Part shown: positions 1,682-61,100 of the stretch, in pieces
Layout of the letters: each line of letters starts with the position of its first letter
How positions within the stretch are numbered: position 1 is the stretch's first letter
Assembly: GCF_964213995.1 (NCBI RefSeq)
Contig: NC_135820.1
Location: 5,456,001-5,520,000 of the forward strand
DNA from: Mustelus asterias
Lineage: Eukaryota
Reading direction: 5' to 3'
DNA: 64,000 bases
Notes under the pieces: model-generated
The model's database searches: none
The model's input: the letters and a program-made list of their open reading frames with translations, nothing else
Told to the model about the DNA's origin: nothing
Position numbers and translations under genes: made by a program

Positions 1682-1945
1682 CTGGTGAGTCCAGCCGGTA
1701 CTCCCTCACACTGACACCGTGCTCATTCTGTGCCATACACAAGATCAGATTTTCAGATCCAGTTGGGTGAGTCAGTCTCAGGGAACTCTCCAGCAAGTGG
1801 GGTGCAATCTCTGAAATGTTTCTGATGATGTTTCTCCCACCGAGGTTCCATGTGATGTTTGCTGCGGGATTGGCTTTGACACGGCAGATACAGTGAACAT
1901 TCTTCAAACTGGTGCAGTTCAGATCTGATACTATTGTGGGTCTAT
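1682..1945 (-). CDS. Gene A C2-set exon 3
   Basis: 264 nt open to a possible donor CCAG|GTACAT. If unspliced it reads on GTSWNILTPAC to a TAG at 1647-1649. Confidence 0.8.
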
Positions 1946-4900
1946 CTATAGAGAAAAAAAAAGAGAGGGTTGAATTTAAGAGCCTTTCACTCATGCAGTT
2001 ATATTTTATAAATCTATCTGACTAAGGCCAGCAAGGTGGCACAGCGGTTAGCACTGCTGCCTCACAGCGCCAGAAACCCAGGTTCAATTCCGGCCCTGCC
2101 TGTCTGTCTGTGCGGAATCTGCACATTTCTCCCCGTGTCTGTGTGGGTATCCTCCAAGTGCTCCAGTTTCCTCCCACACTCCAAGGATGTGTGGGTTAGG
2201 TGGATTGGCCATGCTCAATTGCCATTTAGTGTTCGGGGGATTAGAAGGGTGAAAATATGGGGGTTATAGGGATGGGTGGGATAGTTGTCAGTGCAGACTT
2301 GATGGGCCCAATGGCCTCCTTCTGCACTGTAGGGATCCTATGATTCTATGAACTTATGCTAACGACCAACCAACTGTAATGAAAGGGTTGTCACTGACAA
2401 TATTTTACCCTTTTAATTAAAAACACTAATCAAAGATAAATTAATGAGGGGGTTGCATGGAGGGGTGAGAGAGACTCTGAGGGTGGTGAGGGCACTGTGA
2501 CAAAAAATCAATACATTAAAATCAAATTAAAACCTCCACCCCAGGGGTGATGATGCACCCAGCCCTAACGGTGCCAACTGGTCACAGAAACAATCATTTA
2601 TATATTGACAGGGGCATAACTAAACATCACTGCCGGAATGTTATGACCTCACTCGGGCGAGCGGGTAAAATCCCGCCCGAGGTCAATGGAGAATTCCATT
2701 CTGCGAGCTTCGCCCACCCCGATTCCGGGACCGGCAGGGTGGGAAAATTCCAGCCCACAAATCACTCCAGAGGCATATTAATCAACAGAAGTTAAGACCA
2801 ATCACATCAGGAGATTTCTTTTAGACAAACACAAACAGGGTAAGGGCCTGATTTTAAGCGGTATCTCAAAGGAGGAGAGTAGCTCAAGAGAATGTCAAGG
2901 ATTGGGGAATTTAAAACATTCGCGCCCAAGGAGCCGGCAAAGTCCTCGCCGGAAATGATCTCGTCGTCAAAGTCTGGGGTGTACAAGAGACCCAGAGGTC
3001 AGGGAGGGTGGAGACTCAGAGGTTTCTGGAGCTGTGGGAGGTTATAGAGATACGGAGGGAAGAGTTCATGGAGAGATTTAAAATCGAGACAGTTATTTCT
3101 AATCAAAAGATAAGACTTTGCTGGACTGGGCACCCCATGAGTTTAACATGAATCAATCACATTAAACCGGTTAATGGCTTAACAGAGTGGCCATTTTCCT
3201 AATCTGTAATAAATCAGTAAGACAGTTGTAAGTTTACAATGAGCAGTGAGATAAACTGTCCTGGAGGTGATGGACTATCGCTGGGATACAGATTCTGAAT
3301 AATCCCAGACTCGCTCCGGGAATCTGTCAGTTCTGAGCAACACCTCAGCAGCATTCAATCAGGTTACTCTCTCGAACATCAGGGCCCAGCCAGGGGAATC
3401 TCAAAAAGCCTCATGTGTTAACTGCAGGAATCGGCTGAGTTCCCACACAATCCCACCCCTCCGGGAACAAATTGCTGCCTCTGTACTTGCCTCACATCCC
3501 ATCATTTGGCTGACACTCAATCTGAAATACATTTCCAAGAACCGGGTTGGGTTATTCCATCAGTTGGTCCACTTTCTCCAATTTCACTGACCTTTCTGGG
3601 AATATTCCTGACACTGGCCCCTGTGGTAATTGTGTGTTTACATTGGGGAACAACACACCCGTTACAATTCATGGGAGTGACATTATTGATGTCCCTGTGT
3701 GTATCTGAAGGGTCCCACTCATCACTTACACTGCACGGAGATGTGTGTGGAACTCCTGGCGGTGCCCAGATTATTTGCAGCCTCGCACCAATATTCCCCT
3801 TCATCTTCAGAACTCACATTGTGAATGAAGAGCTTCAGCTCCGCGGCGCGAGAGTTGCTGATCTCTACCCCACGTCGACTCAATGTTAAATTGACTGGGG
3901 GTATCCCCGAAGCTTTGCAACACAATAAGAATGAACTTCCTTCCACTGATACTATAGAGGAATTGAAGATTGGTTTGCAAGGCGCACCTGAAACACACAG
4001 GTTCGTTGGTGCTATAAGAAAATGAAGATTAAAATTTTAAAAAACAAGAAAATAAGAATATCTTCTAGATATGGTGTTTAATTTGTTAAATAAACTGGAA
4101 AAATATTGGTGTCTAATTGCTTAAGCATAAGTTAAACTTAAACATCTATTCAATCGGCATCTTCACTTCAGTTCGTTGTCTAGTTACCTGACTGAACTTC
4201 TAATCAATAAACCTTTCAACCCAGAGACCATTCTTCCCAGATTGAGGATTCTTAACTTTCCCAATGGCATTGAACTCAGTTTTAGCATCAAGACCAACAC
4301 CCCAGCAGCTCCACACAGAAACTAATGATCATTTGATTTTCTGACTTACACGATATCAGCGATTAATCAAGCTGTGGGATAATAGTGGTGGCACAGTGGT
4401 TAGCACTGCTACCTCACAGCACCAGGGACACTGGTTCGATTCCTGGCTTGGGTCACTGTCTGTGCGGAGTTCGCACGTTCTCCCCATGTCTGCATGGGTT
4501 TCCTCTGGGTGCTCTGGTTTCCTCCCACAGTCTGAAAGACATGCTGGTTAGGGGCATTGGCCATGCTAAATTCTCCCTTAGTATACCCGAACAGGTGTCG
4601 GAGTGTGGCGACTAGGGGATTTTCACACTAACCTCATTGCAGTGTTAATGTCAGCCCACTTGTGACACAAATAAATTAACTCAAACGTAAGGAACAAACA
4701 TCCATTAGCCACACATGTCACTCCATGTGTCAGCGACAATGTTAAATAATATAATGGACCAGTAATGGCTGAGAGTTTGATTGATAGACAATGGGGAGAA
4801 GTGACCTCCAGCCCTTACAAATAGATCATGGCGGCTCAGAATTTTAGTGGCGGCTGATATCATAATACTTCATCTCCACCTAGTCATCGAGGTTTACAGT

Positions 4901-7900
4901 ATGGAAGCAGGCCCTTTGGCCCAACATGCCCATGCTGCCCAGTTTTTAACCACTAAGCTATTCCCAATTGCTCACATTTGGCCCATGTTCCTCTCTACCC
5001 ATCTTACCCAAGTAACTGTCCAAATGCTTTTTAAAAGAATAAATTGTACCAGTCTCTACTACTACCTCTGGCAGCTTGTTCCAGACACTCACCACCCTCT
5101 GTGTGAAAAAATTGCCGCACTGGACACTTTTGTAACTCTCCCCATCGCCTTAAAACTTTGCCCTCTAGTTTTAGACTCCCCTGCCTTTGGGAAAAGATGT
5201 TGACTATCTAACGCATCTATGCCCCTCATTATTTTCTAGACTTTCATAAAATCACACCTAAGCCTCTTTCGCTCCAGGGAAAAAAGTCCCAGTCTATCCA
5301 GCTCTCCTTATACCTCAAACTATCAAGTCCCGATAGCATCATGGTTAATCTTTTCTGCACTCTTTCTCATTTAATAGTATTTTTTCCATAATAAAGTGAC
5401 CAGAACTGTAAACAGTATTCCAAGTGTGGCCTTACCAATGCCTTGTACAACTTCAACAAGACGTCACAACTTAAAAATGAAATCTCGCAATCTCAGTTTT
5501 ACAAATGTTCAGTTTTCCAGGCGAGACTCAGACAGATTCTGATATGATTTACCGTCAGGGTGATTGAATAAATCCCAGCGCAGATACCGACACTGCACAT
5601 CCAGTCTCAGAGATTCTTGGACAGTTGTCTGCCCATCGCCACTGATGAGTTTACAGGTCAGGGATTCCCCATGCTGATCCAGTGATGGGGTGAAGGAGAA
5701 AGTTGATGAAACCGTCCAGGAATCCTCCAAACTGTTCCTGGTGTGTTGTGAAGTTAGAGCGCCCGGCAGAAAGGGAGATTCTTCTTCAATCCACTCCAGA
5801 TTAAACTCCGGAACTGAACAACTCTGGGTGAGTGAGCAGGTGAACCGGGCTGGTTTTCCAGCTATCAACTGTCCCAGGACTGAGATATGCAGTTTCTCTG
5901 TCAGGAACAGAGGAAATTCGAGTTACCCAAGATTGCAATTTACAAAACCGAATAAGAGGAGAGCAAAGTCCGAGAAATAATCACATTAATAAATCGATTA
6001 TCTGATTATTGTCTCTGTTATCGGCTGCAGGTTAAAATCCCTAAGTTCCCCCGAGTCAATCGGAACACACTTGTGTTCATTCTGTTAATAATCTGCCCCC
6101 TTCTTTCTGAAGAATTGACCAATGACCTATGAATGTATCACATTATTTGTCAGAAGTGTCTCTGGATGCCCTGGTCCTGACCAGACAGGGTAATAATTAA
6201 CGGGGAAACTGGATAAAATAGAAAGACAACCTTCTCCCTTTGAACCCAATTTGTTAAACACCAGCCTGTTTACTCGACCTGGGAATTATATTTCCCCTCA
6301 TTCAGTTTCTTGTCCTTGCCTTGGAAACATTTTATTAACGTTGAATTCTGTTTTCTGAGGGAGGTTTGGACATTATCAAAGGAGTTTTCACTCCTTTGGG
6401 GAAATGTACTGAAGAGAGGTGGCAGTTTTTCAAGGAATGTCTGTCTAGAGTTCTACAGGACAATGTTCCGAGCAGACAGAGAGGTGTTGGTCGGTTAAAG
6501 GAACCGTGGTGCACGAAAGCTGTGCAGGACCGAGTCGAGAAGAAAGGGAAAGCGTACAAAAGGCGCAGAGAGCTTGGCGAAGATAGGGATTTAGAAGAGT
6601 ATACGGCTTGTAGGAAGGGACTAAAGAAGGAAATTAGGACAGCCAGAAGGAGTCACGAGAAGGCCCTGGCAGGTAGGATTAAGGAGAACCATAAGGCGTT
6701 CTATAAATATGTGAAGAGTAAAAGGATGAGACATGACGGAATAGGACCTATAAAAGGTGAAGGCGGGAAAGTCTGTACGGAACCAGTAGAAATGGCAGAG
6801 GTGCTCAATGAGTATTTTGCCTCGGATTTCACAGAGGAGAAGGACCTGGGTGGATGTACTGCGGGCATGCGGTGGACTGAAAGGATTGAGTATGTGGACT
6901 TTAAGAAAGAGGTTGTGCTGGAATCTTTGAAAGGCATCAAGATAGATAAGTCGCCGGGTCCGGATGGGATGTACCCCAGGTTACTGTGGGAGGCAAGGGA
7001 AGAGATTGCAGAGCCTCTGGCGATGATCTTTGCATCGTCGATGGAGATGGGAGAGGTGCCAGAGGATTGGAGGATTGCGGATGTGGTTACTATTTTCAAG
7101 AAGGGGAATAGGGATAGCCCAGGTAATTACCGACCGGTGAGTCTAACCTCAGTGGTTGGTAAACTGATGGAGAAGATCCTGAGGGACAGGATATATGAGC
7201 ATTTAGAGAGGTTTAGTATGCCCAAGAATACTCAGCATGGCTTTGTCAAAGGCAGATCGTGCCTTACGAGCCTGGTGGAATTCTTCGAAAATGTGACTAA
7301 ACACATTGACGAAGGGAAAGCGGTAGATGTGGTTTATATGGATTTTAGCAAGGCGTTCGATAAGGTCCCCCATGCAAGGCTTCTCAAAAAAGTGAGAGGG
7401 CATGGGATCCAGGGGCCTGCTGCCCGGTGGATCCAGAACTGGCTTGCCCAAAGGAGGCAGAGAGTGGGTATAGATTTGTCTTTTTCGAAATGGAGGTCGG
7501 TCACCAGCGGTGTGCCCCAGGGATCTGTTCTGGGACCCTTGCTGTTTGTCATTTTCATAAATGACCTCAATGAGGAAGCAAAGGGATGGGTTGGTAAGTT
7601 TGCCGATGACACGAAGGTTGGTGGGGTTGTGGACAATCTGGAGGGATGTCAGAAGTTACAGAGGGACATAGATAGGATGCAAGACTGGGCGGACAAGTGG
7701 CAGATGGACTTCAACCCAGATAAATGCGTCGTGGTCCATTTTGGTAGGACAAATGGGATGAAGGAGTACAATATACAGGGAAAGACTCTTTGTACGGTAG
7801 ACGATCAGAAGGACTTGGGGTCCGGGTCCATAGGACTCTGAAATCGGCCCCGCAGGTGGAGGAGGTGGTTAAGAAGGCGTATGGTGTGCTGGCCTTTATC

Positions 7901-10016
7901 AATCGAGGGATTGAGTTTCGGAGTCCAGGGATAATGATGCAGCTATATAAGACCCTAATCAGACCCCACTTGGAGTACTGTGCTCAGTTCTGGTCGCCTC
8001 ACTATAGGAAGGATGTGGAAAAGATTGAAAGGGTGCAGAGGAGATTTACAAGGATGTTGCCTGGATTGAGTGGCATGCCTTATGAGGATAGGCTGAGGGA
8101 GCTCAGTCTTTTCTCCTTGGAGAGACGAAGGATGAGAGGAGACCTAATAGAGGTGTATAAGATGTTGAGAGGCATAGATCGGGTGGACTCAGGGTGGAAA
8201 TGTCTGCTACGAGAGGACACAGGTTTAAGGTGCTGGGGGATAGGTACTGGGGAGATGTTAGGGTTAAGTTTTTCACACAGAGGGTGGTGGGCGAGTGGAA
8301 TCGGCTGCCGTCAGTGGTGGTGGAGGCGAACTCAGTGGGGTCTTTTAAGAGACCCCTGGATGAGTACATGGAGCTTAATAGGATGGAGGGTTATAGGTAG
8401 GTCTAGAAGGTAGGGATGTGTTCGGCACAACTTGTGGGCCGAAGGGCCTGTTTGTGCTGTAGTTTTTCTATGTTTCTATGTTTCCACACTGGATAATAAC
8501 ATTTTCTAAGGCATAAACATTCAGTGGGATCTCCCAGATAACCAGTCTTCAAAGCAAAGTTCTGACCTTAAGTTTTTTTGATGTTGTAAATTAATGGTTC
8601 CACTTTGCATTCGATGGTAACACTTTTGCGCACATTCAAAACCAATGAGATCTCCAAGGTAACATGCCTTTATCATAAAGTTAGGGCTCAGGTTGTGGGA
8701 CTCTCCTTGCCGGCTGAAAATTGGGTTCAAATCCCACTGCCGAGAATACATTAGGGCAGTGACACTTTATTAGTGATGAATCTGTTTGGGACGACCTCAG
8801 CTCATGAAAGGCGCTATTTAAATGCAGGACGCACTCCTGCCTTCATTAAACGGAGGGGTATTAACGACGGGATTCCTCCCATGTACTGACCGTGTGTCCC
8901 TCCATCCATTCAGAGTGTGAATCTACACTCAATGTTCAGTCTCGATTAAGGATTGTTTTTTGTTGTTGTTCTGTATAGTTCATTTTCCCAAATTACATTT
9001 AGTAAGTGGACAGCGGGGGGAATTTCTGCGGGTTTGGGATGTCAGTAACCTGTTTGAGTTCAGGTCAATAACATCACACACACCTGGATATGGTACACTG
9101 TACCACCTTGGAGTCGAAGCCTTTAACATTCGCCAATAGTAACAGCACACAATAACACCCTGCTCACTGAGAAAGCGGAATATAAACTCCTCACAAATGA
9201 ATGGAAAACCTACCCAGAATTGAGAGAGAGACAGGAATTTTCTGAAGGTGATTTTCGGCACTATTCCAGGGACTGGTCATCTTCACTCTGATGTAATAAT
9301 CCCCTTCATCTCCGCTCCTGATGTCCTTTATCAATAAGGAGAACTGTTTCTTTGCCACCTTTCCCTTCAGCTCAATTCTCCCTCTATATCCCGGGGCTGC
9401 TCTCCCCGGCTCTGCGGAATCATAGATAACAGAAACCCCAGGAGTACGAGGATCAGAACCCCCCTTCAGCCACAGAATCCGTGGATTGCTGTATGTGTCG
9501 GGATAATCAAATGTACACGGGATTTCTGCACACGAGCCTCTCACAGCCGTCACATTCCAGGGAATCCTCACAGACCATCGGGAACTATGGAGAACTGATA
9601 AACAAATATCCATTTCATTAATAATGAGCTGGCCAATGATAAACCGAATAAAATAATCCCAAAATTACAGCTCGCCACTGTTACATTTCCCTTGAAGCAT
9701 CCACTGTTATATATACATCGCCAACAATTACAACTCTGCAAGTTCCCATTGAAACGATTCAAATTTTAGTAAATATTTCATTCAAACACATTGAAGTCAG
9801 AATTCTGTCAATTCAGTAAAATACAGAATAGAATTTCCAATATGAGATGCATTACAGCCTCAACATTAAATACAAATTTTTAATTAACCATTCTTATCTC
9901 TGGACTTCATGAATATTTTATTTTATTCACCAGACGGATACACCCTCAATCGGAAATTATTAAAAGAATCTTGTACCTTGGATAAACATCAGGATGAGGG
10001 GAACACACTTCATCAT
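1682..10016 (-). CDS. Gene A: Siglec-like ectodomain (leader-V-C2-C2-C2), open reading frame, 3' part not identified in the window
   Basis: Exons 9977-10016, 9214-9594, 5592-5897, 3730-3987 and 1682-1945 are all phase 1 and open, and are a near-identical inverted copy of gene B exons 1-5. No TM exon was found in 1-1680. Confidence 0.75.
2028..2350 (+). mobile_element. HE1-type V-SINE (inverted paralog 51168-51487)
   Basis: A/B boxes, V-domain and TTCTATG tail. Confidence 0.88.
2631..2757. mobile_element. Possible MITE-like element (paralog about 50772-50897, related pieces about 52357-52482 and 52793-52932)
   Basis: GC-rich insert absent from the paralogous intron near 17700, bounded by imperfect inverted termini GCCGG(A/G)ATTTT...AAAATTCCAGC. 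Confidence 0.4.
3730..3987 (-). CDS. Gene A C2-set exon 2
   Basis: 258 nt open, TTTCAG| and |GTAAGT. Confidence 0.85.
4385..4676 (+). mobile_element. V-SINE variant with a different 3' tail (inverted paralog 48858-49150)
   Basis: Same head and V-domain, but ends GGCGACTAGGGGATTTTCAC...AATAAA. Confidence 0.8.
4881..5470 (-). mobile_element. Old CR1/HER1 3' fragment duplicated with the gene (also + at about 17020-17448, 33090-33517, 46805-47392)
   Basis: LYKTLVRPHLEYC...QRVVSVWN motif at the same position downstream of C2 exon 1 in four copies. Confidence 0.85.
5592..5897 (-). CDS. Gene A C2-set exon 1
   Basis: 306 nt open. The donor is T|GTCGGT, weaker than GTAGGT in gene B. Confidence 0.82.
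6395..8482 (+). mobile_element. 5'-truncated CR1/HER1 LINE, specific to gene A intron 2
   Basis: RT motifs (KSPGPDG, YRPVSLTS, DFSKAFD, GVPQGSVLGP, FADD), a frameshift near 7820 and a (TTCTATG)n tail. The paralogous site near 41700 is empty. Confidence 0.95.
9214..9594 (-). CDS. Gene A V-set exon V1 (open, E-strand Cys replaced by Phe)
   Basis: 381 nt with intact splice sites. YYIRV is kept, but KQFSLL replaces KQCSLL. Confidence 0.85.
9977..10016 (-). CDS. Gene A leader exon L1
   Basis: MMKCVPLILMFIQ + G|GTACAA, same as L6. Confidence 0.78.
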
Positions 10017-10794
10017 AATCATCACTACAGAAGGTTCACCATTGTAGGAAGGAACTGATTTCAGATTAAAACCTGGTGCTGAATTCCAGACGCTGCTAAT
10101 CGATTGCTGATCGATTACAATGGAATCGGAGCTGCTGGGCACCCCCTCATTGGGAATCGATTTAACCTCGCACAGTTTGGCAATCTCACTCCCTCTCAGC
10201 GACCGCCACTAGCTGTCTCAGACAGCGACAGCATGGAGCTGGGCAGTAATGTGTTACTCACACAGTTAGTGGGTGCAATGGTGCCAAACTAGTGACAAAG
10301 GCTCACCAACTGATAATGAACCCTTCATTGTGATCGGCTGTTCAGATAACAGGACAGGAACAAACATTTTAGACTGGAAAACCAAAAATAGCCCAGCAGC
10401 GCACAAGCTTCAGCCCGCTGTCTCACACATCTTTCTCTACTTTTCAGTCAGTACGCTCTGAATGTGATGTTGTGGTTATTTCTGTAACCGCTGCTTGCAA
10501 ATAAGTCGCTTCGCACCTTCAAACTTTTGCGCCAAAACATGTATCTTAAACGTCAATGGGACGTAAGCATTTTCTCGCACTAAATACTCGGAAAGACCAT
10601 GAGAGGGGAGGCTATTGTAGAGTGGTATTGTCACTAGTGGTACTGTCACTCACCATCTGACTTGGAAATACAGTCACCAAAGGCCAGAACAATGCTCTAT
10701 TCGAATCCCACCACAGATTCAATAAACTCTGGAACTAAAAATCTAATGACCATGAAACCATTGTTGAAACGTCCTGTCGGGGAGGAAATGTCCC

Positions 10795-11240
10795 ACAACA
10801 CCAGGTTAAAGTCCAACAGGTTTATTTGGTAGCAAATATCATAAGCTTTCGGAGCGATGCCCCTTCGTCAGATGGAGTAGTTATCTGTTCTCCAACAGTA
10901 CACAGACACAGAAATCAAGTTACAGAATACTAATTAGAATGCAAATCTCTACAGCCAGCCAGGTCTTAAAAGGTACAGATAATGTGGGTTCCCTCCACCC
11001 ACATTATCTGTACCTTTTAAGACCTAGCTGGCTGTAGAGATTTGCATTCTAATTAGTATTTTGTAACTTGATTTCTGTGTCTGTGTACTGTTGGAGAACA
11101 GATAACTACTCCATCTGACGACAGGGGATCGCTCCGAAAGCTTATGGTATTTGCTACCAAATAAACCTGTTGGACTTTAACCTGGTGTTGTGAGACTTCT
11201 TACTGTGCTTACCCTAGTCCAACGCCGGCATCTCCACATC
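10795..11240. mobile_element. Penelope-like element family 1, hairpin insertion
   Basis: Inverted arms of about 195 bp centred near 10990, 3' tail CCGGCATCTCCACATC, hammerhead motif in each arm. Confidence 0.8.
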
Positions 11241-43658: not shown

Positions 43659-43896
43659 CAGTAAGAAGTTTAACAACACCAGGTTAAAGTCCAACAGGTT
43701 TATTTGGTAGCAAAAGCCACACAAGCTTTCGGAGCTGCAAGCCCCTTCTTCAGGTGAGAAGAACTTGAAGAAGGGGCTTGCAGCTCTGAACGCTTGTGTG
43801 GCTTTTGCTACCAAATAAACCTGTTGGACTTTAACCTGGTGTTGTTAAACTTCTTACTGTGTTTACCCCAGTCCAACGCCGGCATCTCCACATCAT
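43659..43896. mobile_element. Penelope-like hairpin insertion in the pair-3 spacer
   Basis: Inverted arms of about 95 bp plus the conserved tail. 12-bp TSD CACTTATTTGCA at 43647-43658 and 43897-43908. Confidence 0.85.
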
Positions 43897-43919
43897 CACT
43901 TATTTGCAAGCAGCGGTTA

Positions 43920-44384: not shown

Positions 44385-44424
44385 ATGATGAAGTGTGTTC
44401 CCCTCATCCTGATGTTTATCCAAG
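44385..44424 (+). CDS. Gene B leader exon L6 (MMKCVPLILMFIQ)
   Basis: ATG, hydrophobic 13-mer, donor CAAG|GTACAA, phase 1. An in-frame upstream ATG exists at 44379. Confidence 0.8.
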
Positions 44425-53400: not shown

Positions 53401-56400
53401 TGTGGTGGGATTTGAACCCGGGTCCCCAGAACATTACCCTGGATTACTAGTCCAGGGAAAATACCAGTATACCGCTGCCTCTTCATTAGATGTAACAGTG
53501 CTGCATGCAGATATACATTGTATCTTATTGTCATCTTGTAATTTAGAACTATAATGCCCAACAAGACTTTTTTTTATATTTTAGGAACTTTTCCCTGGTG
53601 GATCGTCATCCTGATAGTTACGGCTGCAGCTATTATTCTGATTCTCATCATGGTGAAGGTGCAGAGGTATGTGTGTGCTTCCTAAATACTGAAACTCACA
53701 TGGTCATCACAAATTTGAAAGGCTTTCAGGGGGCTGAGAGGAGGGTTGTCGGGATTTCTGCAGATGAGGAACGATTGTTCAAAGTGGTACGCCCGGAGAT
53801 TCCCTGAGAAGTGTTGTGAAGGGGGAGAGTGAATGGAGGCCAGGTCTTCATGTGGGGAAGATAGGGAAATGGCAAATTCTCCAAGTCCCCTGGTCAGTCT
53901 ATCACTGACTTCTGCCGGCAATCATGTTCTAGACTTTTGGTTTGGTCGGTGCCTTTGTGTTATGTACTTAAGTGGTTGAAGGATTGCTTTAGGAGCAGGT
54001 CGCATGATTTGATGGTGATGTCATTAGGGTGTTTCAGAGGCTCCTGCTTTTAGAACATAGAACATAGAACAGTACAGCACAGAACAGGTCCTTCGGCCCA
54101 CGATGTTGTGCCGAGCTTTATCTGAAACCAAGATCAAGCTATCCCACTCCCTATCATCCTGGTGTGCTCCATGTGCCTATCCAATAACCACTTAAATGTT
54201 CCTAAAGTGTCTGACTCCACTATCACTGCAGGCAGTCCATTCCACACCCCAACCACTCTCTGCGTAGAGAACCTATCGCTAATATCCTTCCTATATCTCC
54301 CACCACGAACCCTATAGTTATGCCCCCTTGTAATAGCTCCATCCACCCGAGGAAATAGTCTTTGAACGTTCACTCTATCTATCCCCTTCATCATTTTATA
54401 AACCTCTATTAAGTCTCCCCTCAGCCTCCTCCGCTCCAGAGAGAACAGCCCTAGCTCCCTCAACCTTTCCTCATAAGACCTACCCTCCAAACCAGGCAGC
54501 AACCTGGTAAATCTCCTCTGCACTCTTTCCAGCGCTTCCACATCCTTCTTATAGTGAGGTGACCCGAACTGCACACAATATTCCAAATGTTGGAATTTCA
54601 GTTTGTCCTCTGTGCAGGCAAGAGCTCCTTCAATAAATCTGTTGTTGTTACTTTGAATCTACATGTGCAAGCCACATCTTTTTTTCTTTTTGTGTAAAAC
54701 TCAATAATTAGGACATTACACTTTCCCTGCAGTGTTGTAAAATAAAATATGGGTTTAGACTTCAGAATTAAGTATAGAAACAGAATATCCCCCTCACACT
54801 GTACCGCAGTGGGGCATTGTGAGAGATGCTGTCTCTCCTAACAGATGTGTAACCCAAAACACCCTCAATTAGCAGAAACAGATGCTAAGGTATTAGCGCA
54901 AGAGGAGTGAGGTTCTATCACTATCATCCCAAACAGGCAACCCACCACAATAGAATAATTGATCAGTTGTCACCAAGCTGTTTTATGGGGACCAGGACTG
55001 CATTAAAGGACTTCCACATTTGAAACAATTCCCATAAAATTCAAGAAGAATTGAGATGTGCACTTGTAATGCCAAGGCACACAAGGCTACGGACCGAGTG
55101 CTGGGAAATGGGATCAGATCTTTGACTGGCGCAGGTGTGATGGGCCGAAGGGCATTTTTCTATGCTGTACACCTCTATGATGCTGACAATCTGGTTACAC
55201 TTTCAAAATTAAATAATGACCTGGGCAAGTTCGTTCTGGCTGGTTTGGACTGGAATAGTCAAACAACAGATTTGCATTACTGTAGTAACCTTATTCTTCC
55301 CCGAGGGTTTAACGGCGGGCGGGGCGGGGGGGGTGGCGCGGAGGCAGAATAGAACATAGTGAGGAGGCAAATTTGAAACAGCGGATGGTGTTGGAGACAA
55401 ATTTCAAAGCAGCAGATAGTGTAAGAAGCAGTGACAACCCAGTGCAAACAGTAAGAAGTCTCACAAAACCAGGTTAAAGTCCAACAGGTTTATTTCATAT
55501 CACGAGCTTTTGGAGCGCTGCCCCTTCATCAGGGGCGGCACGGTAGCACAGTGGTTAGCACTGCTGCTTCACAGCTCCAGGGATCTGGGTTCGATTCCCG
55601 GCTTGGGTCACTGTCTGTGTGGAGTTTGCACATTCTTCCTGTGTCTGCGTGGGTTTCCTCCGGGTGCTCCGGTTTCCTCCCACAGTCCAAAGATGTGCGG
55701 GTTAGGTTAATTGGCCATGCTAAATTGCCCCTTAGTGTCCCGGGATGCATAGGTTAGAGGGATTAGCGAGTAAATATATGGGGATAGAGCCTGGGTGGGA
55801 TTGTGGTCGGTGCAGACTCGATGGGCCGAATGGCCTCTTTCTGCACTGTAGGGTTTCTATGATTGATCTATGATTGAGGTGAGTCATCTTGTGAGACTTC
55901 TTACTGTGCCTACCCGAGTTCGATGCCGGCATCTCCACATCAATCCAGCGCAAAGGCATTTGTTTATGGAGGATCTTACCACGGGAGCATTTACAAGTTC
56001 AAATCAGACCTGTTTGACCCACATTACAAACCCACATTCATTGATCCATCAAATCCTGGATTGAGACTTCAACACCATCAGGCTCTGAGATAGAGACAGT
56101 ACACTCTCTGTGGGATGATCAAGGGATTTAAAGAGAAGTATTTGTCTGACGCATAGCGGGAATTTTCTTATTAACATCCACAAGCTTGTTGTCAACATTT
56201 TTTTCTAACTCTGCTGACGTTATTTAGTCTCCACGAGTCACATCACAAAATTACATCTGAATATCTAAACTAACAATAGCAATGGACTGGTCAATTTATC
56301 AAAAATAAAAAAACTGGGACCAATCGAATTGAAGTAACTCCAGAACTTCGGACAAGTCATGAATGCAAAGATATTAAACAATAAATCATAGGAGATGTTT

Positions 56401-59400
56401 GTGTTTGAAAAATGAAGACTTGGCCCTTGCTTGAACCCCAATGCCTGGTATCACAGCACAAAGATGTGTATCTATTTTTTAATTATTCATTTACAGGAAG
56501 TGGGTGTCGCTGACTTGGACAGCATTTATTGTCCATTCCTAATTGGGAGTAAATAGAATCCATAGAATCCCTACAATACAGAAGGAGGCTTTTCGGCCCA
56601 TTGAGTCTGTACCGACCACAATCCCACCCAGACCCTACTCCCGTAACCCTCGTTTATCCTGCTAATCCCCCTGACACTGGTCAATTTAGCATGGCCAATC
56701 AACCTAACCCGCACATCTTTGGACTGTGGGAGGAAACCTTCAATGTTTAAGGTAGTGGATGAAGTGCCAATCAAGTGGGGCTGTTTTGCCCCGGATGGTG
56801 TTGAGCTCCTCGAGTGTTGTTGGAGTTGCGCTCAAACAGGCAAGTGGAGAGTATTCCATCCCACTCCTGACTTGTGCCTTGGAGATGGTGGGCAGGCTTT
56901 GGGGGAGTCAGGAGGTGGATATCTCAATGAACTCTCAATATCTCAATGAGCTGGGGATGAGAAAAATATCAGCCATGATTGAATGGCAGAGCAGACTCAA
57001 TGGGCCAAGTGGCCTAATTCTGCTCCTATGTCTTATGGTCTCTCACATGGATGAGTGAATGAAATGGTTTGTTGCCTCCAATTCACCAGAACAGAATGAA
57101 GAAACTATAAACCCTTTAACTTTAAGAAAGTGATATTGGAAACGTAAGATATTATAATTAGGAGGAGGTGGGGCGGAGAGGTTGGGTGCAGGCTAGCTGT
57201 GAGGAGGAGATGGGGGGTTCCAGTTGGGAGGGAGGGAAGATATATTTGGCCATGATAGCTCAAACATGGTGGTACAGGGTGCCTCTGATAGGTCACCTGA
57301 TCCTTTCTTGCTCATCGTAACCATACATGGAAGTCCTGCTGAAATTTTTAAAAGTTTTTTTGTTGAGGCAGGGGTTTAATCTCTTCCTCCTGCTCTGTAT
57401 TTAAAGAAAAATGTCTGAAAATCCTACTGGTTAACAAGATGGGAACTTTCTACGCGAAACACTTGTTTGCTGCTTAATACAATGTTAAGACTCTGTAAGA
57501 AAATCCAACACAGGGTTAGCAATCTGTAACTCTCCCTTATACTTATTAAAGCTACACCGGGTTTTTCTTACAATAAACTACCTGTTATTTAAAAAATGAA
57601 ACATTGTTTGTGCTATCAGGAAGAAGACAAGTGACATCGTCTCTGTCCCAGAAATCAGTGATGATTCAGTGACTTACGCTGCGGTGAGACATTCGCTGAA
57701 CACCCAGGTAAGGAAGGAAAAAGAAACTCACCAAATGCAAAGGAGATATCTACCTGATTGGTCAGAAACAAATTTTTAAACAATGTGAATTTTATTCTCC
57801 AAAAAAATATCTACATTTCATATCAAACATTCTCAGGTGGTTTCTTTTTGGAAGGAAATCATTAATTGACAGAACAGACAATGTTACTCGGGGAGGAGGG
57901 GGGGGGGGGGGAAGAATCCCTACAGTGCAGAAGAAGGCCATTTGGCCCATCGAATCTGCACTGACTCTCCAAAAGAGCACTCTACCTACGCCCACTCCCC
58001 TGCCCTATTCCTGTAACCCCACACATTTAGCATGGCCAATCCATCGAATCTATACATCTTTGGACATTAAGGCGCAATTTAGTATGGCCAATCCATCTAA
58101 CCTTGGTAATGAATTCCACACATTCACCACCCTCTGGGTGAAGAATGTGTAGAATTCACTACCACAGAAAGTAGTTGAGACCAAAACGTTGTGTGATTTC
58201 AAGAAGAAATTAGATACTGCTCTTGGGGCTAAAGGGATCAAGGATACGGGGCGAAGGGAGGGATCAGGATATTGAATTTGATGGTCAGCCATGTCTTTGG
58301 ACTGTGGGAGGAAACCAGAGCACCCGGAGGAAACCCACTCAGACATGGGGAGAACGTGCAGACTCCACACAGACAGTGGAACAGGCTCAAAGGGCTGAAC
58401 GGCCTCCTCCTGCTTCTATGAAATCTGCACAGCATTGGACACTAAGGGTCAATTTAGCATGGCCAATCCACCTAACCTACACATCTTTGGACTGTGGGAG
58501 GAAACCAGAGCACCCGGAGGAAACCCACTCAGACATGGGGAGAACGTGCAGACTCCACACAGACAGTGACCCAAGCCAGGAATTGAACACGGGTTCCTGG
58601 TGCTGTGAGACAGCAGTGCTAACCACTGTGCTACCGTGCCGCCCATGACCTTACACCCTCCCCTTTTCGCTGTGTGAAGCAACTGCTGCTGTCTCCGAGC
58701 ACTGGCGATGGCAGGCAGACGCAGCCTGGGTGAGGGACTTCGGCCTCACTCACCTGTGCGGGTACATTGCCTTTGCACTGCCTCCTCACTCTGTGAAGCT
58801 GTTGCTGTGTCTGAGGGTGATTATTGGGGGATCAGAAGGGAAATTAATCATCTTAGAAACTGATTTGACAGTGGGGACTGCACAGCCTAAAATCATTTCA
58901 GAAACAGCCAACTGCTGCGATGGAAGATCTTTTGTTTCTGAGCGATTGAATGAATTGAGAAAGAAGTTCAAAGCCTCTCTCCCCCCACAAACCTGTTCCT
59001 CTATCTTGTGATTGAAGTGATACAATGCCATCCTCTGCTGGTGGACGGATGCTACTGCACAAGAGGATGGGGAAATCACCAGAAATTCAATAAAAGGGAT
59101 ACTTCAGGTAAAATGACAGAAAAATAACAACAGATGCCTTCCAGTTACATTAGATCCTGCAGTTTGGATTCTCAACAGGGTCAGGTAGAATAAGGGGTTT
59201 GAAAAAAACAAACAGCATCAGTGTATTTTGTAACCAGCTGGAATTTCAGCCTTGGATTTATGGTGCTGTTTTTATCCCAGGGAAGGGGGAGTGGGGGGGG
59301 GAGAGAGGGAGGGTGGACGGAGGAAGGGGGCGGGGGGGGGGGGGGGGGGGGTGATCCCTGTCCAGGAAGTGGGTGAGAAATGGCCAACCACATGGGAGAA

Positions 59401-61100
59401 GTTGGGACTGTTTCCAGGGTAGAAATGTCATTCACCGGGGGACATAGGTTAAAGGCAAAAGGGGGAAAGTTTAAAGGAGATGTGACAGGCAAGTTTTTTA
59501 CAGAGGGTGGTAAGTACTTGGAATGCACTGCCAGAGGAGGTGGTAGAAGCAGATACAATAGCGGCGTTTAGGAGGCATCTCGACAGATACATGAATAGAT
59601 CATAGATCTTCATAGATCATGGAATCCCTACAGTGCAGAAGGAGGCCATTCGGCCCATCAAGTCTGCAGTGACCACAATCCCTCCCAGGCTCTTTCACTA
59701 TAATCCCATGCACTCAGGGACAACTTAGCATGGCCCAATCGATCTAACCTCTTTAGACTGTGGTAGCAAATCTGAGCACCTGGAGGAAACAGGTAGGAAT
59801 TAGAGGGATACGGACCACGTAGAGGCACTAGATCTTCAGTTTATAGAACCCCAAAAAGCAGAAGGAGGCCATTTGGCCCATCGAATCTGCACCGACCACA
59901 ATCCCACCCAGGTCCTATCTCCGTAGCTCCATTTACCCTAGCTAGTCCCCCTGACACTAAGGGACAATTTAGCATGGCCAATCCACCTAACCCGCACATC
60001 TTTGGACTGTTTCGAAAGGCTTCATGTGTCGGCATAGGCTTGTTGGGCTGAAGGGTCTGTTTCTGTGCTGTACTGTTCTTTGTTCTCCTTGGAGAGAAGG
60101 CTATGAGGAGATTTGATGGAGATGTTCAAAATCATGAGAGGTCTGGTCAGAGTAGACGGGGAGAAACTGTTCGCGCTTGTGAAAGGATCGAGAACGAGGG
60201 GGCATAGATTTTAAAGTGATTTACGAAAGAAGCAATGTGAGAAAAAACATTTCCATGCAGTGAGTGGTTGGGGTCTGGAATGCACTGCCTGGAAGTGTGA
60301 CTGAGGCAGGTTCAATTGAGGCATTTGAGAGGGCATGAGATAATTATTTGAACAGAAACAAGATGCAGGGGTGCAGGTTGCGGTTGGGGGTGGGTGGGTG
60401 GCGGTGGTGGTGAAGGGAGGGCAGGGGAAAGGTCATTAAGTCATGTTTGTTTGGAGAGCCAGTGTAGACTCGGGGTGGGGGGTGGTGGGGTGGGGAGGGG
60501 GGGGTGGTGGGGGGGGGGGGGTCAAAGGGCCTCCTTCTGCACCTTATTAATTCTGTGATTCTGAGCTGGCAGAGATTGGGATTGCCCTATTTCCATAAGG
60601 ATTGTAACCCTGTGCAAGGTTTGAGATGAAGTTAAGTCTCGTCGAGAGGGTGTGTTGGAGCTAAAATACCTCCAAACATCAGCAAAAATGGATTGTCAGG
60701 CCATTTGTAAAACAACTTTTGGCGCAAATAACTCCAAATGTAACTCATTGCCACTGAGTGTCTGTAATGTGCTCTTTAAATATAAGACAATATGTATCGG
60801 AATTAAAAGTGATTTTTCCCTGACTGAGTGTGAACAGTAGATTGGTATCAGAGATTGAATAAAGTAGATTATTCTGGTACAGATATTACACTCCCATCCA
60901 CGTCACTATGTCTAACACACAGTTTTCTGCTACAGGACCAAGGCCTGGGCAGGAATATTGATGGTCCAGGGACTGCATCCAAATCAGCTCAAAGTGAGGA
61001 GGTTCTGTACGCAGCACTCAATGTCTCAAACATTCACAAACCTGAAATGCATCTCCAGACTGAGGAACCCAACCAATACGCTGCAATTAAATGGAAATGA
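44385..61100 (+). CDS. Gene B: complete Siglec-like inhibitory receptor (V-C2-C2-C2-TM-ITIM), 8 coding exons, 1623 nt, 540 aa
   Basis: Exons 44385-44424, 44807-45187, 46381-46686, 49548-49805, 51568-51870, 53585-53666, 57620-57707 and 60936-61100 are all joined by GT-AG introns with matching phases (1,1,1,1,1,2,0) and have no internal stop. Siglec V-set signature GSCAEIPC..W..GR..CSLLI.D..D.G.YYIRV, hydrophobic TM and ITIM-type tail are present. Confidence 0.88.
44807..45187 (+). CDS. Gene B V-set exon V6 (intact)
   Basis: TTTATCAG| acceptor, CTGG|GTAGG donor, 381 nt open. Keeps CxxxPC, the E-strand CSL Cys (45058-45060) and the F-strand Arg of YYIRV (45112-45114), which in Siglecs binds the sialic acid carboxylate. 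Confidence 0.92.
46381..46686 (+). CDS. Gene B C2-set exon 1
   Basis: GACAG| ... T|GTAGGT, 306 nt open. FTCSLTQSC..W..FSFTPSLDQHGESLTC matches Siglec domain 2, including the extra Cys for the d1-d2 disulfide. Confidence 0.92.
47560..48811 (-). mobile_element. 5'-truncated CR1/HER1 LINE in gene B intron 3
   Basis: 359-aa open RT/C-terminal ORF. 8-bp TSD GAGTGATA at 47552-47559 and 48812-48819. Empty site in gene A near 4720. Confidence 0.95.
49548..49805 (+). CDS. Gene B C2-set exon 2
   Basis: TTTCAG| ... T|GTAAGT, 258 nt open, with VSSEDEGEYWCEAANNLG Ig F-strand motif. Confidence 0.92.
51568..51870 (+). CDS. Gene B C2-set exon 3 (membrane-proximal)
   Basis: Polypyrimidine tract + TATAG|, donor C|GTGAGT, 303 nt open. 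C-x7-CxC..ANP..CMAQNEHG resembles the last Ig domain of MAG and long CD33-related Siglecs. Confidence 0.88.
52110..52325 (-). mobile_element. HE1-type V-SINE (internally deleted)
   Basis: Head and V-domain motifs. Confidence 0.8.
53585..53666 (+). CDS. Gene B transmembrane exon (RTFPWWIVILIVTAAAIILILIMVKVQR)
   Basis: TTTTAG| ... AG|GTATGT, phase 1 to 2, with an uncharged hydrophobic run of about 20 residues. Not shown in the ORF track in this frame. Confidence 0.88.
54052..54590 (-). mobile_element. CR1 LINE 3' fragment
   Basis: EYCVQFGSPHYKKD...QRVVGVWNGLP and a (CATAGAA)n tail. Confidence 0.9.
55449..55941. mobile_element. Penelope-like hairpin remnant with a nested HE1-type SINE (55533-55875, +)
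   Basis: Same termini as the other copies. Degenerate 13-bp TSD AACCCAGTGCAAA / AATCCAGCGCAAA. Confidence 0.78.
57620..57707 (+). CDS. Gene B cytoplasmic exon 1 (KKTSDIVSVPEISDDSVTYAAVRHSLNTQ)
   Basis: TATCAG| ... CAG|GTAAGG, phase 2 to 0, with ITIM consensus VTYAAV at 57669-57686. Confidence 0.85.
57915..58645 (-). mobile_element. Cluster of HE1-type SINE pieces with an embedded CR1 3' fragment
   Basis: V-domain duplicated at about 58295-58378 and 58485-58568, head at about 58580-58645. Confidence 0.75.
60936..61100 (+). CDS. Gene B terminal cytoplasmic exon (DQGLG...EEVLYAALN...EEPNQYAAIKWK*)
   Basis: TTTTCTGCTACAG| phase 0, ITIM VLYAAL, and a distal NQYAAI motif just before the stop, as in Siglec tails. 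Confidence 0.9.
   Translation, partial: DQGLGRNIDGPGTASKSAQSEEVLYAALNVSNIHKPEMHLQTEEPNQYAAIKWK

What the first reader, a model, noticed from the sequence alone, without database searches (positions are those of the whole stretch)
1682..61100. Siglec-like locus built as an alternating-orientation cassette array between two divergent genes: candidate inversion/gene-conversion diversification system
Seen: the order is <-A(C3,C2,C1,V1,L1) | (L2,V2,C1)-> <-(C2,C1,V3,L3) | (L4,V4,C1)-> <-(C2,C1,V5,L5) | B(L6,V6,C1,C2,C3,TM,ITIMs)->. That is six near-identical promoter-leader-V units in three head-to-head pairs, with only one TM/cytoplasmic module in the window. All four internal V exons are disabled, while the two outer ones are open. 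Known: paired Siglecs (SIGLEC5/14, head-to-head SIGLEC11/16) are homogenised by gene conversion, and pseudo-V arrays act as conversion donors in chicken Ig. Inference: a crossover between a - strand cassette and gene B would invert the interval and attach a different V to the ITIM tail, and non-crossover repair would patch donor sequence into V6 or V1. The array could therefore be a reservoir that varies the ligand-binding domain of a shark innate receptor, in the germline or possibly somatically. I do not know of a description of this in chondrichthyans but cannot search. Plain birth-and-death decay remains a fair alternative.
Basis: partly seen in the sequence, partly recalled or inferred. 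Interest (0 to 1): 0.9.

Follow-up and report, generated by a model that had tools for sequence, protein, structure and literature searches.

The report
Shark paired Siglec genes with decayed copies
This is a shark locus holding an inhibitory and a probably activating sialic-acid-receptor gene placed head to head, with four broken partial copies between them left by segmental duplication; the copies have swapped sequence over evolutionary time, but nothing shows a purpose-built diversity generator.

Summary
V1 and V6 are open and V2-V5 are disabled. Gene B has the only TM exon and the ITIM tail in the window.

The V domain belongs to the Siglec family. Gene A's TM exon lies just off the window. 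NCBI's model gives it an Arg-bearing TM and a short tail, so A and B look like an activating/inhibitory pair.

The architecture fits a palindromic head unit that was amplified in tandem about three times. That makes the inner copies truncated from birth, so their decay is expected.

The copies are mosaics:
- PHI p = 0.008-0.03, and at least 29 incompatibility events.
- U3 and U4 share a complex 4-bp deletion.
- The centre of pair 2 is flipped.

Germline gene conversion and one inversion are therefore supported.

Closest known are the primate SIGLEC11/16 and SIGLEC5/14 pairs. I found no paper on shark Siglec loci. Another note of this scan, on this same window, had already recorded the flipped spacer.

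The parts
1682..10022 (-). Gene A, the part in the window. Exons: L1 10022-9977, V1 9594-9214, C1 5897-5592, C2 4011-3730, C3 1945-1682. All are open with AG/GT borders. V1 has Phe at the E-strand Cys. The TM exon lies off the window.
   Evidence: tail from NCBI model P0005
6398..8484 (+). LINE (reverse transcriptase) inserted in A's V-C1 intron. It is absent at the matching point of B.
10507..11773 (.). Spacer 1 between the U1 and U2 arms. It holds a 409-nt self-complementary centre at 10790-11196. The stretch 11345-11700 next to U2 recurs, inverted, next to U3.
12256..17448 (+). Cassette U2. L2 is 12256-12301, with G->A at the last exon base and Met->Thr. V2 is 12685-13065 with TAA at 12942. 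A LINE lies at 13227-15757. C1 is 16611-16897 and lacks its acceptor and first 19 nt.
17449..17703 (.). Tail-to-tail junction J1. Here the + copy, cut in the C1-C2 intron, meets the - copy, cut in the C2-C3 intron. The junction region as a whole recurs at J2.
17704..28599 (-). Cassette U3. C2 is 18480-18202 and broken (3 stops). C1 is 21871-21566 with one nonsense codon. Insertion 23358-27645, with a LINE (endonuclease ORF 24764-25771; homology to A's LINE 25491-27503). V3 is 28170-27794, with the 4-bp deletion and Arg->Lys. L3 is 28599-28554.
29082..30128 (.). Spacer 2, flipped relative to spacer 1. The stretch 29161-29502 matches 11345-11700 in inverted orientation at 95%.
30610..33517 (+). 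Cassette U4. L4 is 30610-30655 with Met->Ile. V4 is 31038-31412 with a 2-bp and a 4-bp deletion. C1 is 32661-32966 and open.
33518..33701 (.). Tail-to-tail junction J2, the copy of J1.
33702..43230 (-). Cassette U5. C2 is 34572-34291 and open. A LINE lies at 35599-37872. C1 is 40080-39775 and open. V5 is 42802-42444 with a 10-bp and a 12-bp deletion. L5 is 43230-43185.
43615..43994 (.). Spacer 3, 380 nt, with a 205-nt self-complementary centre at 43657-43861.
44379..61100 (+). Gene B, which matches NCBI XP_078093182.1 (564 aa). Exons: L6 44379-44424, V6 44807-45187, C1 46381-46686, C2 49524-49805, C3 51568-51870, an uncharged TM 53585-53666, cytoplasmic 57620-57707 (VTYAAV at 57669) and cytoplasmic 60936-61100 (VLYAAL at 61002, NQYAAI at 61071, stop at 61098). 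A LINE lies at 47561-48811.

Best explanation
The locus is a pair of Siglec-family receptor genes of a shark, set head to head. Gene B is inhibitory in type: an uncharged TM and two ITIMs. Gene A is activating in type: an Arg in the TM and a short tail, both encoded beyond the window edge.

The shared 'head' of the pair is promoter, leader, V and C1, plus C2 on the minus side. It forms an imperfect palindrome. A unit of roughly 14-18 kb of that palindrome was duplicated in tandem. An unequal crossover then made a third copy.

Because the unit ends inside introns, the four inner copies never had a full set of exons. They have decayed as pseudogene fragments, while the outer copies stayed joined to their tails and stayed open.

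Since then the kilobase-long repeats have recombined in the germline. Short gene-conversion tracts made all six copies mosaics. A longer exchange keeps the heads of A and B alike. One crossover between the inverted arms of pair 2 flipped its centre.

Shown: the anatomy, the lesions, the mosaicism, the flipped centre, and heads that are alike joined to tails that are not. Inferred: the order of the duplications, the activating role of A, sialic-acid binding, and the claim that the exchanges are incidental rather than selected.
For: Family.
- Pfam gives V-set (3e-11) and Ig_CD22 (8e-9).
- The 18 best PDB matches are all Siglecs (sialoadhesin, Siglec-5, -8, -10, -7, MAG, Siglec-15, CD33). The Arg of YYIRV aligns with the Arg of the sialoadhesin and Siglec-5 F strands.

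Pairing.
- A at 1672-10506 matches B at 43898-51867, inverted, at 93-95% across introns. The likeness stops within about 20 nt after the C3 exon.
- A's tail, taken from P0005, is 46% identical to the tail of Cetorhinus P0011, including PIRV and MNSHR. B's tail is 58% identical to Heterodontus P0014. The tails of A and B match each other only 29% over 21 aa.
- A versus B over the four Ig exons gives pS 0.0605, pN 0.0306 and a ratio of 0.51.

Duplication.
- Three direct copies of each arm are present, and the tail-to-tail junction is itself duplicated: 16611-18885 matches 32680-34972 at 92.5%.
- In distal intron 2 the splits are U3+U5 at 8 sites and U2+U4 at 5 sites. An unequal crossover in a two-unit array predicts exactly this.
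- Five separate LINE insertions lie at different points in the copies.

Decay. Every inner cassette has lesions, and all but the 4-bp deletion shared by U3 and U4 are its own.

Exchange.
- PHI p = 0.008, 0.018 and 0.03.
- 73 biallelic informative sites give an Rm of at least 29.
- U3 and U4 share a 4-bp deletion together with an adjacent substitution.
- Mean pairwise non-CpG divergence is 3.1% in promoter, leader and intron 1, against 6.8% in intron 2.
- The A+B split is seen at 1 site upstream of B coordinate 45050 and at 15 sites downstream.

Inversion.
- Spacer 2 is flipped.
- Splits of the inner type outnumber the outer type 7 to 2 before B coordinate 44958. After 44978 the count is 4 to 23.

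Generality. Neighbouring genes share 97% (Cetorhinus) and 96% (Scyliorhinus torazame) identity in V-C1. S. torazame is only 81-84% identical to S. canicula there.
Against: - A's TM and tail were never seen in DNA. They come from an NCBI model that is itself chimeric across cassettes and skips L1 and V1.
- V1 lacks the conserved E-strand Cys, so A may be impaired.
- No RNA run was found, so expression and splicing of A, B and the inner cassettes are unknown.
- The strand-type split that simple tandem amplification predicts (A+U3+U5) has only 3 sites, against 16 for A+B. The order of events therefore needs an added A-B exchange and is not unique.
- The pairwise run test found no pair that survives correction: the best was p = 0.0055 among 15 pairs.
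- The Fisher p of 0.001 for the switch point was computed after the point had been chosen by eye.
- Lower divergence in the promoter, leader, intron 1 and C1 could partly reflect constraint rather than conversion.
- Whether the exchanges are neutral by-products or selected cannot be told from one haplotype.
Confidence: 0.75

Rival explanations
1. Selected germline reservoir. The four inner cassettes are kept because conversion tracts and inversions from them create new V1 and V6 alleles. That would give the population a varied ligand-binding domain on a fixed signalling tail.
For: - Mosaicism is real.
- The functional V exons share variable patches with pseudogenes. V6 shares Asn78, which makes an NVT sequon, with V2, and Thr66 with V3. 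V1 shares Phe84 with V5.
- The 8 residues that differ between V1 and V6 all lie between codons 49 and 91, in the middle of the domain.
- An inversion with a crossover inside V exons has happened once.
- Pseudogene-to-gene conversion is on record for primate Siglecs (passages of PMC5701461).
Against: - The direction of transfer is unknown.
- Every donor carries a frameshift or a stop within a few hundred bases of any useful patch.
- V1 versus V6 gives pN/pS = 0.54.
- The donors differ from the acceptors by only 3-6.5% and look like neutral decay.
- Truncation of the inner copies follows from how the array was made.
- No population data were available.
Confidence: 0.12
2. Somatic diversification. 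In leukocytes, inversion or templated conversion rewrites V6, or swaps V5 for V6, so that cells differ in receptor specificity, as in chicken immunoglobulin genes.
For: There is only the geometry. Inverted kilobase repeats lie 380 nt apart next to the expressed gene, and exchange has occurred at some time in the germline.
Against: - No tool result bears on somatic tissue.
- The donors keep upstream regions, leaders and splice sites.
- The nearest donor, V5, is the most damaged.
- The 15 joints shown of 176 are all skips within 33.3-35.9 kb, where the very-high-depth repeat bins lie; none joins one cassette to another.
- No such process is known for any Siglec (my knowledge, and passages read).
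Confidence: 0.02
3. Assembly artefact. The repeated cassettes or their orientations were produced by mis-joining or fold-back reads.
For: Palindromes with short spacers and multi-copy repeats are hard to assemble. The only read support comes from what is probably the same individual.
Against: - The copies differ by 3-15% and carry different LINE insertions and different lesions. Fold-back or duplication errors would not create that.
- Unique stretches, including spacer 2 and the right side of J2, are matched exactly by contigs at single-copy depth. The depth over L and V is about four times higher.
Confidence: 0.03

Closest known systems
Primate SIGLEC11 / SIGLEC16 (with SIGLEC16P)
   Same: Both are an inhibitory and an activating Siglec gene set head to head a few kb apart. 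The 5' regions, from upstream sequence through the first Ig exons, are nearly identical through repeated gene conversion. A pseudogene form with a 4-bp deletion has served as donor (passages of PMC5701461). In the shark, the heads are 93-95% alike, the tails differ, a 4-bp deletion occurs in V3 and V4, and the copies are mosaics.
   Different: The shark locus has four extra truncated cassettes between the two genes, made by tandem amplification of the palindromic head. The two functional genes lie 34 kb apart, not 9. Orthology to any mammalian Siglec was not tested. Ligand binding, co-expression and adaptor use are unknown.
Primate SIGLEC5 / SIGLEC14 paired receptors
   Same: The ligand-binding domains are near-identical and kept alike by gene conversion, the signalling is opposite, and the activating partner is prone to loss (passages of PMC13358205; listing of PMC4042635). 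NCBI names gene B 'sialic acid-binding Ig-like lectin 14'.
   Different: That NCBI name is automatic, and B has the inhibitory tail. From recall, the primate pair lies in tandem rather than head to head.
Chicken immunoglobulin pseudo-V gene conversion
   Same: An array of disabled V segments in both orientations lies next to a functional V (recalled, not checked in a paper here).
   Different: From recall, chicken donors lack promoter, leader and recombination signals and differ strongly in the binding loops, and the process is somatic and enzyme-driven. Here the donors are whole truncated gene copies with leader and splice sites, 3-6.5% diverged, and only germline exchange is evidenced.
Palindromes and inverted segmental duplications with arm-to-arm conversion and spacer flipping (for example on primate sex chromosomes)
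   Same: Both have kilobase arms in inverted orientation around a short spacer, arms kept alike by conversion, and a spacer orientation that can flip by crossover between the arms (recalled). Here spacer 2 is flipped and the arms are 94-97% alike.
   Different: The arms here are more diverged than those classic palindromes, and they carry immune-receptor exons.

Membership tests
Siglec family (I-type lectins) | N-terminal V-set Ig domain that is closest to Siglec V domains | tested here: met
   Pfam gives V-set and Ig_CD22 above their cut-offs. The 18 best PDB sequences are all Siglecs, the best at E = 5e-14.
Siglec family (I-type lectins) | Conserved F-strand arginine that binds sialic acid | tested here: met
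   The Arg of YYIRV aligns with the Arg of sialoadhesin and of Siglec-5. It is present in V1, V2, V4, V5 and V6 and is Lys in V3. That this Arg is the binding residue is recalled, and is mentioned in a passage of PMC13358205.
Siglec family (I-type lectins) | Siglec cysteine pattern: two Cys in the A'-B region and one in strand E | tested here: inconclusive
   V6 has GSCAEIPC and KQCSLL, which align with the Cys residues of sialoadhesin. V1 and V5 have Phe at the strand-E position. The structural role of these Cys residues is recalled.
Siglec family (I-type lectins) | Binds sialylated glycans | not testable with these tools
   This needs recombinant V1 and V6 proteins on glycan arrays.
Paired activating/inhibitory immune receptors | Closely linked genes with highly similar ectodomains | tested here: met
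   A and B are 93-95% identical in DNA from the upstream region to the C3 exon. V1 and V6 share 118 of 126 residues.
Paired activating/inhibitory immune receptors | One partner with an uncharged TM and cytoplasmic ITIMs | tested here: met
   B's TM reads WWIVILIVTAAAIILILIM. VTYAAV and VLYAAL lie in the two cytoplasmic exons.
Paired activating/inhibitory immune receptors | Other partner with a charged TM residue and a short tail without ITIM | tested here: inconclusive
   NCBI model P0005 ends FIFPIRVAVAIVVFFALVALVTMDMNSHRYNR. The motif is shared with Cetorhinus P0011.
Paired activating/inhibitory immune receptors | Same cells, same ligands, adaptor association | not testable with these tools
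   No RNA run was found.
CD33-related Siglec subfamily | Orthology or clade membership with mammalian CD33-related Siglecs | not tested
   No phylogeny with mammalian Siglecs was made. The PDB ranking puts sialoadhesin first and Siglec-5 second. The build is alike: a short ectodomain, a TM and tyrosine motifs.
Pseudogene-templated somatic V diversification (chicken Ig type) | Donors are bare V segments without promoter, leader or splice signals | tested here: not met
   All four inner cassettes keep the upstream region, the leader ATG and the V-exon acceptor and donor. U2-U5 also carry C1, and in two cases C2.
Pseudogene-templated somatic V diversification (chicken Ig type) | Somatic conversion tracts in expressed V | not testable with these tools
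   No RNA or tissue-resolved reads were available. Read laying gave contigs only.
Site-specific invertible DNA switches | Short specific sites and a dedicated recombinase | not tested
   The repeats are homology arms of 0.4-3 kb. Of the long ORFs, I scanned only 5 LINE-like ones, and they gave reverse transcriptase and endonuclease. No systematic recombinase search was done.

The most novel reading that the evidence does not exclude
The alternating cassettes work as a germline exchange pool. In Mustelus populations, V6 and V1 alleles are mosaics assembled from tracts of V2-V5, and cassette orientation is polymorphic. Under this reading a shark innate sialic-acid receptor pair gains binding-site variety by conversion and inversion, and the same head-homogenising process runs in several shark lineages. 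A somatic version of the process is the boldest form of the idea. On my evidence it stands at about 0.02.
Probability: 0.13. Interest if true: 0.7.

Novelty: new member of a known kind. Interest (0 to 1): 0.42.

Why it matters
Paired Siglecs kept alike by gene conversion are described for primates. A teleost study states that fish genomes lack inhibitory CD33-related Siglecs; the passages I read (PMC7226832) do not mention sharks.

This locus shows the same logic in a cartilaginous fish: an ITIM-bearing Siglec with three Ig domains beside a partner of activating type. The heads are young and alike and the tails are old and different. The near-identity of V-C1 between neighbouring genes recurs in Cetorhinus and Scyliorhinus torazame.

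This suggests that head homogenisation of Siglec pairs is either ancient or repeatedly reinvented in jawed vertebrates. It also offers a compact natural record of palindrome formation, tandem amplification, inversion and conversion.

It does not currently offer a new diversification mechanism.

Tried and rejected
Tried without result.
- A search for a TM exon of gene A in 1-1700 found one hydrophobic stretch at about 332-270 on the minus strand. It has no convincing acceptor, so I did not count it.
- My GENECONV-like longest-run test gave no pair that survives correction for 15 pairs. The best was U2-U5 at p = 0.0055.
- Read laying on 30000-35999 could not address orientation polymorphism. All four runs were short contigs, the longest laid piece was 470 nt, and repeats at 33.0-33.6 and 34.6-36.0 kb swamp the tables.
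- Run X3 is of unknown kind. It carries Nextera-type adaptor ends and patchy cover at 31118-31890 and 34143-34554, so I draw no conclusion about expression from it.
- Organism B (run X5) gave only thin cover and no listed piece over a junction.
- No run on record as RNA holds the stretch.
- Paper searches for Siglec with shark, elasmobranch, chondrichthy or cartilaginous returned no paper on shark Siglec loci. I saw the listings, and passages of PMC8455134 and PMC13262535, which mention Siglecs only in passing. Supplements were not opened and could hold gene lists that bear on this.
- The search of earlier findings by words gave two notes on other pieces of this genome. I did not use them.

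Considered and rejected.
- Fold-back or duplication artefact: the copies differ by 3-15% and have private LINE insertions.
- A shared LINE insertion in U2 and U3 as evidence of common descent: the two elements are only 71% alike, lie in opposite orientation to their host copy, and enter about 30 bp apart.
- Positive selection on V: pN/pS is 0.54.


Full report
**What is there**

The window has no N. It is full of kilobase-long direct and inverted repeats of 82-97% identity.

<-A(C3,C2,C1,V1,L1) | (L2,V2,C1)-> <-(C2,C1,V3,L3) | (L4,V4,C1)-> <-(C2,C1,V5,L5) | B(L6,V6,C1,C2,C3,TM,cyt,cyt)->

Coordinates are in the parts list.

The V exons stand as follows:
- V1 and V6 are open, 381 nt each.
- V2 has a TAA at 12942.
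- V3 has a 4-bp deletion about 15 nt before its donor, and Lys at the key Arg.
- V4 has a 2-bp and a 4-bp deletion.
- V5 has a 10-bp and a 12-bp deletion.

Further lesions lie in the inner constant-type exons:
- U2's C1 lacks its acceptor and first 19 nt.
- U3's C1 has a nonsense codon and its C2 is broken.
- The C1 exons of U4 and U5, and U5's C2, are still open.

V1 is open but has Phe where V2, V3, V4 and V6 have the conserved strand-E Cys. V5 shares the Phe.

**What family**

The V6 exon scores V-set and Ig_CD22 in Pfam. C1 scores C2-set_2 and C2 scores Ig_2.

Against PDB sequences, the 18 best matches are all Siglecs: sialoadhesin at 5e-14, then Siglec-5, -8, -10, -7, MAG, Siglec-15 and CD33. 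The alignments place the Arg of YYIRV on the F-strand Arg, and the Cys residues of GSCAEIPC and KQCSLL on their counterparts.

A search of the V6 exon against 1.84 billion representative proteins found a 564-aa protein 100% identical over the exon. NCBI names it 'sialic acid-binding Ig-like lectin 14 [Mustelus asterias]', XP_078093182.1.

That protein maps onto gene B's exons, including a cytoplasmic exon at 57620-57707 with VTYAAV. The TM is uncharged. The last exon has VLYAAL and NQYAAI and ends at 61100.

**Gene A is probably the activating partner**

A and B are inverted copies, 93-95% identical through exons and introns, from 10506/43898 to 1672/51867. The likeness ends within about 20 nt after the C3 exon.

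NCBI's neighbouring model XP_078093181.1 (P0005, 662 aa) contains A's C1, C2 and C3. It ends with FIFPIRVAVAIVVFFALVALVTMDMNSHRYNR, which is a TM with an Arg followed by a ten-residue tail.

The tails compare as follows:
- A's tail is 46% identical to the tail of a basking-shark protein (P0011), with PIRV and MNSHR conserved.
- B's tail is 58% identical to a Heterodontus protein and 45% to a Chiloscyllium protein.
- The tails of A and B match each other only in 21 TM residues, at 29%.

Heads that are young and alike joined to tails that are old and different define paired receptors, as described for SIGLEC11/16 and 5/14 (passages of PMC5701461 and PMC13358205).

Three cautions apply. P0005 is a chimeric model: it starts inside V5, takes U5's C1 and C2, adds a small exon antisense to L2, then takes A's C1-C3, skipping L1 and V1. 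And V1 lacks a conserved Cys.

Over the four Ig exons, A versus B gives pS 0.0605, pN 0.0306 and a ratio of 0.51. That is relaxed constraint, not free decay.

**How the array arose**

The arms on the minus strand (U1, U3, U5) and those on the plus strand (U2, U4, U6) each recur at about 18.4 and 13.8-14.6 kb.

Each plus copy ends at the point that matches B 47232, in the C1-C2 intron. Each minus copy ends at about the point that matches B 50770-50989, in the C2-C3 intron.

The tail-to-tail junction so formed exists twice, and the two copies are homologous across it: 16611-18885 matches 32680-34972 at 92.5%. So one tandem duplication of a head-to-head unit made the junction, and a later event copied it.

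In distal intron 2 the informative sites group U3 with U5 (8 sites) and U2 with U4 (5 sites). This is what an unequal crossover within the central part of a two-unit array yields: [a1|b1][a2|b1'][a2'|b2].

Under this origin the inner four copies never had a complete exon set, so their decay needs no special explanation.

Spacers 1 and 3 have self-complementary centres, of 409 nt at 95% and 205 nt at 94%. So each pair is an imperfect palindrome.

Five LINE insertions lie at different points in A, U2, U3, U5 and B. Pfam finds RVT_1 in the scanned ORFs of the A, U2 and B elements and the endonuclease family in those of U2 and U3. No ORF of the U5 element was scanned.

**Exchange between copies**

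A simple history predicts the split (A,U3,U5 | U2,U4,B). It has 3 sites.

A+B has 16 sites, 15 of them downstream of B coordinate 45050, and 28 more in intron 3. There A-B and U2-U4 differ by 7-8%, but the two groups differ from each other by 13-15%. So the heads of A and B were made alike after the inner copies had diverged, or one head was copied from the other.

Upstream of the middle of the V exon, all six copies are 2-6% apart with no tree.

Overall there are more than 15 different splits among six sequences. Of 73 biallelic informative sites, 21 are in CpG context. The minimum number of recombination or homoplasy events is 6 + 7 + 13 + 3 = 29 over 2.3 kb.

My PHI test gives p = 0.008, 0.018 and 0.03 for windows of 5, 10 and 15 sites, with 2000 permutations.

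U3 and U4, which are head-to-head neighbours, share a 4-bp deletion with an adjacent substitution.

Mean pairwise non-CpG divergence is as follows:

| Region | Divergence |
|---|---|
| Promoter, leader, intron 1 | 3.1% |
| V exon | 3.8% |
| C1 exon | 1.8% |
| Intron 2 | 6.8% |

Against this, my longest-run test found no pair significant after correction, and part of the gradient may reflect constraint. I take germline gene conversion among the cassettes as well supported, at about 0.85.

**An inversion**

The 355 nt next to U2 (11345-11700) recur, inverted and 95% identical, next to U3 (29161-29502). A's flank recurs next to U4.

Along the arms, splits that pair U4 with A or U5, and U3 with U2, dominate up to B coordinate 44958, by 7 against 2. 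Splits pairing U3 with U5 and U2 with U4 dominate from 44978 on, by 23 against 4. Fisher p is 0.001, but I chose the switch point after seeing the data.

The switch maps to about 28019/27999 in V3 and 31189/31209 in V4. So a crossover between the inverted arms, inside the V exons, seems to have flipped roughly 3.2 kb.

**What is not shown**

No result speaks for a system kept for diversification, nor for somatic change.
- The donors retain upstream sequence, leaders and splice sites.
- The donors are only 3-6.5% from the acceptors in V.
- V1 versus V6 gives pN/pS = 0.54.
- Each donor has a disabling lesion close to any variable patch.
- V5, the neighbour of V6, is the most damaged.

The functional exons do share variable patches with pseudogenes, so transfer from pseudogene to gene is possible. 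Its direction is unknown.

**Reads**

The look-up of sequencing runs listed 23 runs with coded names, none on record as RNA.

I laid X1, X2, X3 and X5 on 30000-35999. X1 and X2 come from one sample, probably the assembly's own. They give exact contigs at word depth about 13-16 on unique stretches: 30000-30351, 31790-31933, 32428-32573, 33619-34184 and 34687-34868. Over L4, V4 and C1 they give contigs with 1-6 differences at depth about 50-60. So the several copies are present in the reads.

All 15 joints shown, of 176, are skips between 33.3 and 35.9 kb, where the very-high-depth repeat bins lie. None joins one cassette to another. Contigs this short cannot show an inversion whose ends lie inside kilobase arms.

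**Other sharks**

The V-C1 part of P0001 found 13 proteins at E <= 1e-20 among 611 candidates, all from cartilaginous fishes.

| Comparison | V-C1 identity |
|---|---|
| Two Cetorhinus genes on one 85-kb contig | 97% (96% over 227 aa) |
| Two Scyliorhinus torazame genes on one contig | 96% |
| S. torazame against S. canicula | 81-84% |
| Mustelus against other genera | 43-63% |

Near-identity of heads within a species thus recurs. This fits concerted evolution or repeated recent duplication.

The key Arg is not universal. It is Thr in the Scyliorhinus proteins, Ala in Heterodontus and Lys in Stegostoma.

**Comparison and novelty**

The closest known case is SIGLEC11/16 with SIGLEC16P. The differences are the four extra cassettes and the lineage.

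My searches found no paper on shark Siglec loci. A teleost paper states that fish genomes lack inhibitory CD33-related Siglecs (passages). NCBI's automatic names already flag these genes.

I file the locus as a new member of a known kind, with moderate interest.

Noticed in passing
window 1682-42786 (minus strand): NCBI model XP_078093181.1 ('myelin-associated glycoprotein-like', 662 aa) is a chimera across cassettes. It starts at an internal Met of the broken V5, uses U5's C1 and C2, adds a 19-residue exon antisense to leader L2 (about 12286-12342), then uses A's C1, C2 and C3 and an off-window TM. It skips L1 and V1.
   Followed up: partly
window 9214-9594 (V1) and 42444-42802 (V5): V1, the open V of gene A, has Phe where the conserved strand-E Cys of Siglec V domains stands. 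The broken V5 has the same Phe; V2, V3, V4 and V6 have Cys. Gene A may therefore fold differently or be impaired.
   Followed up: partly
P0155, P0156, P0027 (Scyliorhinus), P0014 (Heterodontus), P0007 (Stegostoma); window 27794-28170 (V3): The sialic-acid-binding Arg is replaced in several shark relatives: Thr in Scyliorhinus, Ala in Heterodontus, and Lys in Stegostoma and in V3. It is kept in Mustelus V1 and V6, Chiloscyllium, Cetorhinus and Heptranchias. This resembles the recurrent loss of the Arg in mammals.
   Followed up: no
window 10790-11196 and 43657-43861: Self-complementary stretches of 409 nt (95%) and 205 nt (94%) lie at the centres of spacers 1 and 3, and the two are related to each other. 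They may be the original palindrome centre or a foldback element.
   Followed up: no
window 13226/13227 and 27645/27646: Two different LINEs, 71% alike and in opposite orientation to their host copy, entered U2 and U3 within about 30 bp of the same point, just downstream of the V exon.
   Followed up: partly
window 51568-51870 against 1682-1945: B's C3 exon has an extra in-frame 24 nt (NISVANIT, which repeats the neighbouring NITWN motif and adds N-glycosylation sequons) and an extra codon relative to A. A has a 10-nt insertion at the exon end that creates its own donor site.
   Followed up: no
P0010 and P0011 (Cetorhinus, one 85-kb contig); P0156 and P0027 (Scyliorhinus torazame, one contig): Neighbouring Siglec-like genes in two other sharks also share 96-97% identical V-C1 but differ downstream. 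One Cetorhinus gene has the Arg-in-TM tail.
   Followed up: partly
window 33000-33600, 34600-34800, 35000-36000: Word depth in the read contigs reaches 1e5-1e6 in all four runs, organism B included. These are very high-copy interspersed repeats shared between the two organisms.
   Followed up: no
run X3 on window 31118-31890 and 34143-34554: A run of unknown kind, with Nextera-type adaptor ends, covers only V4 plus its downstream intron and the C2 region, at depth 3-12, and nothing else that is unique in the 6 kb. I could not tell whether this is RNA, an enrichment library or chance.
   Followed up: no
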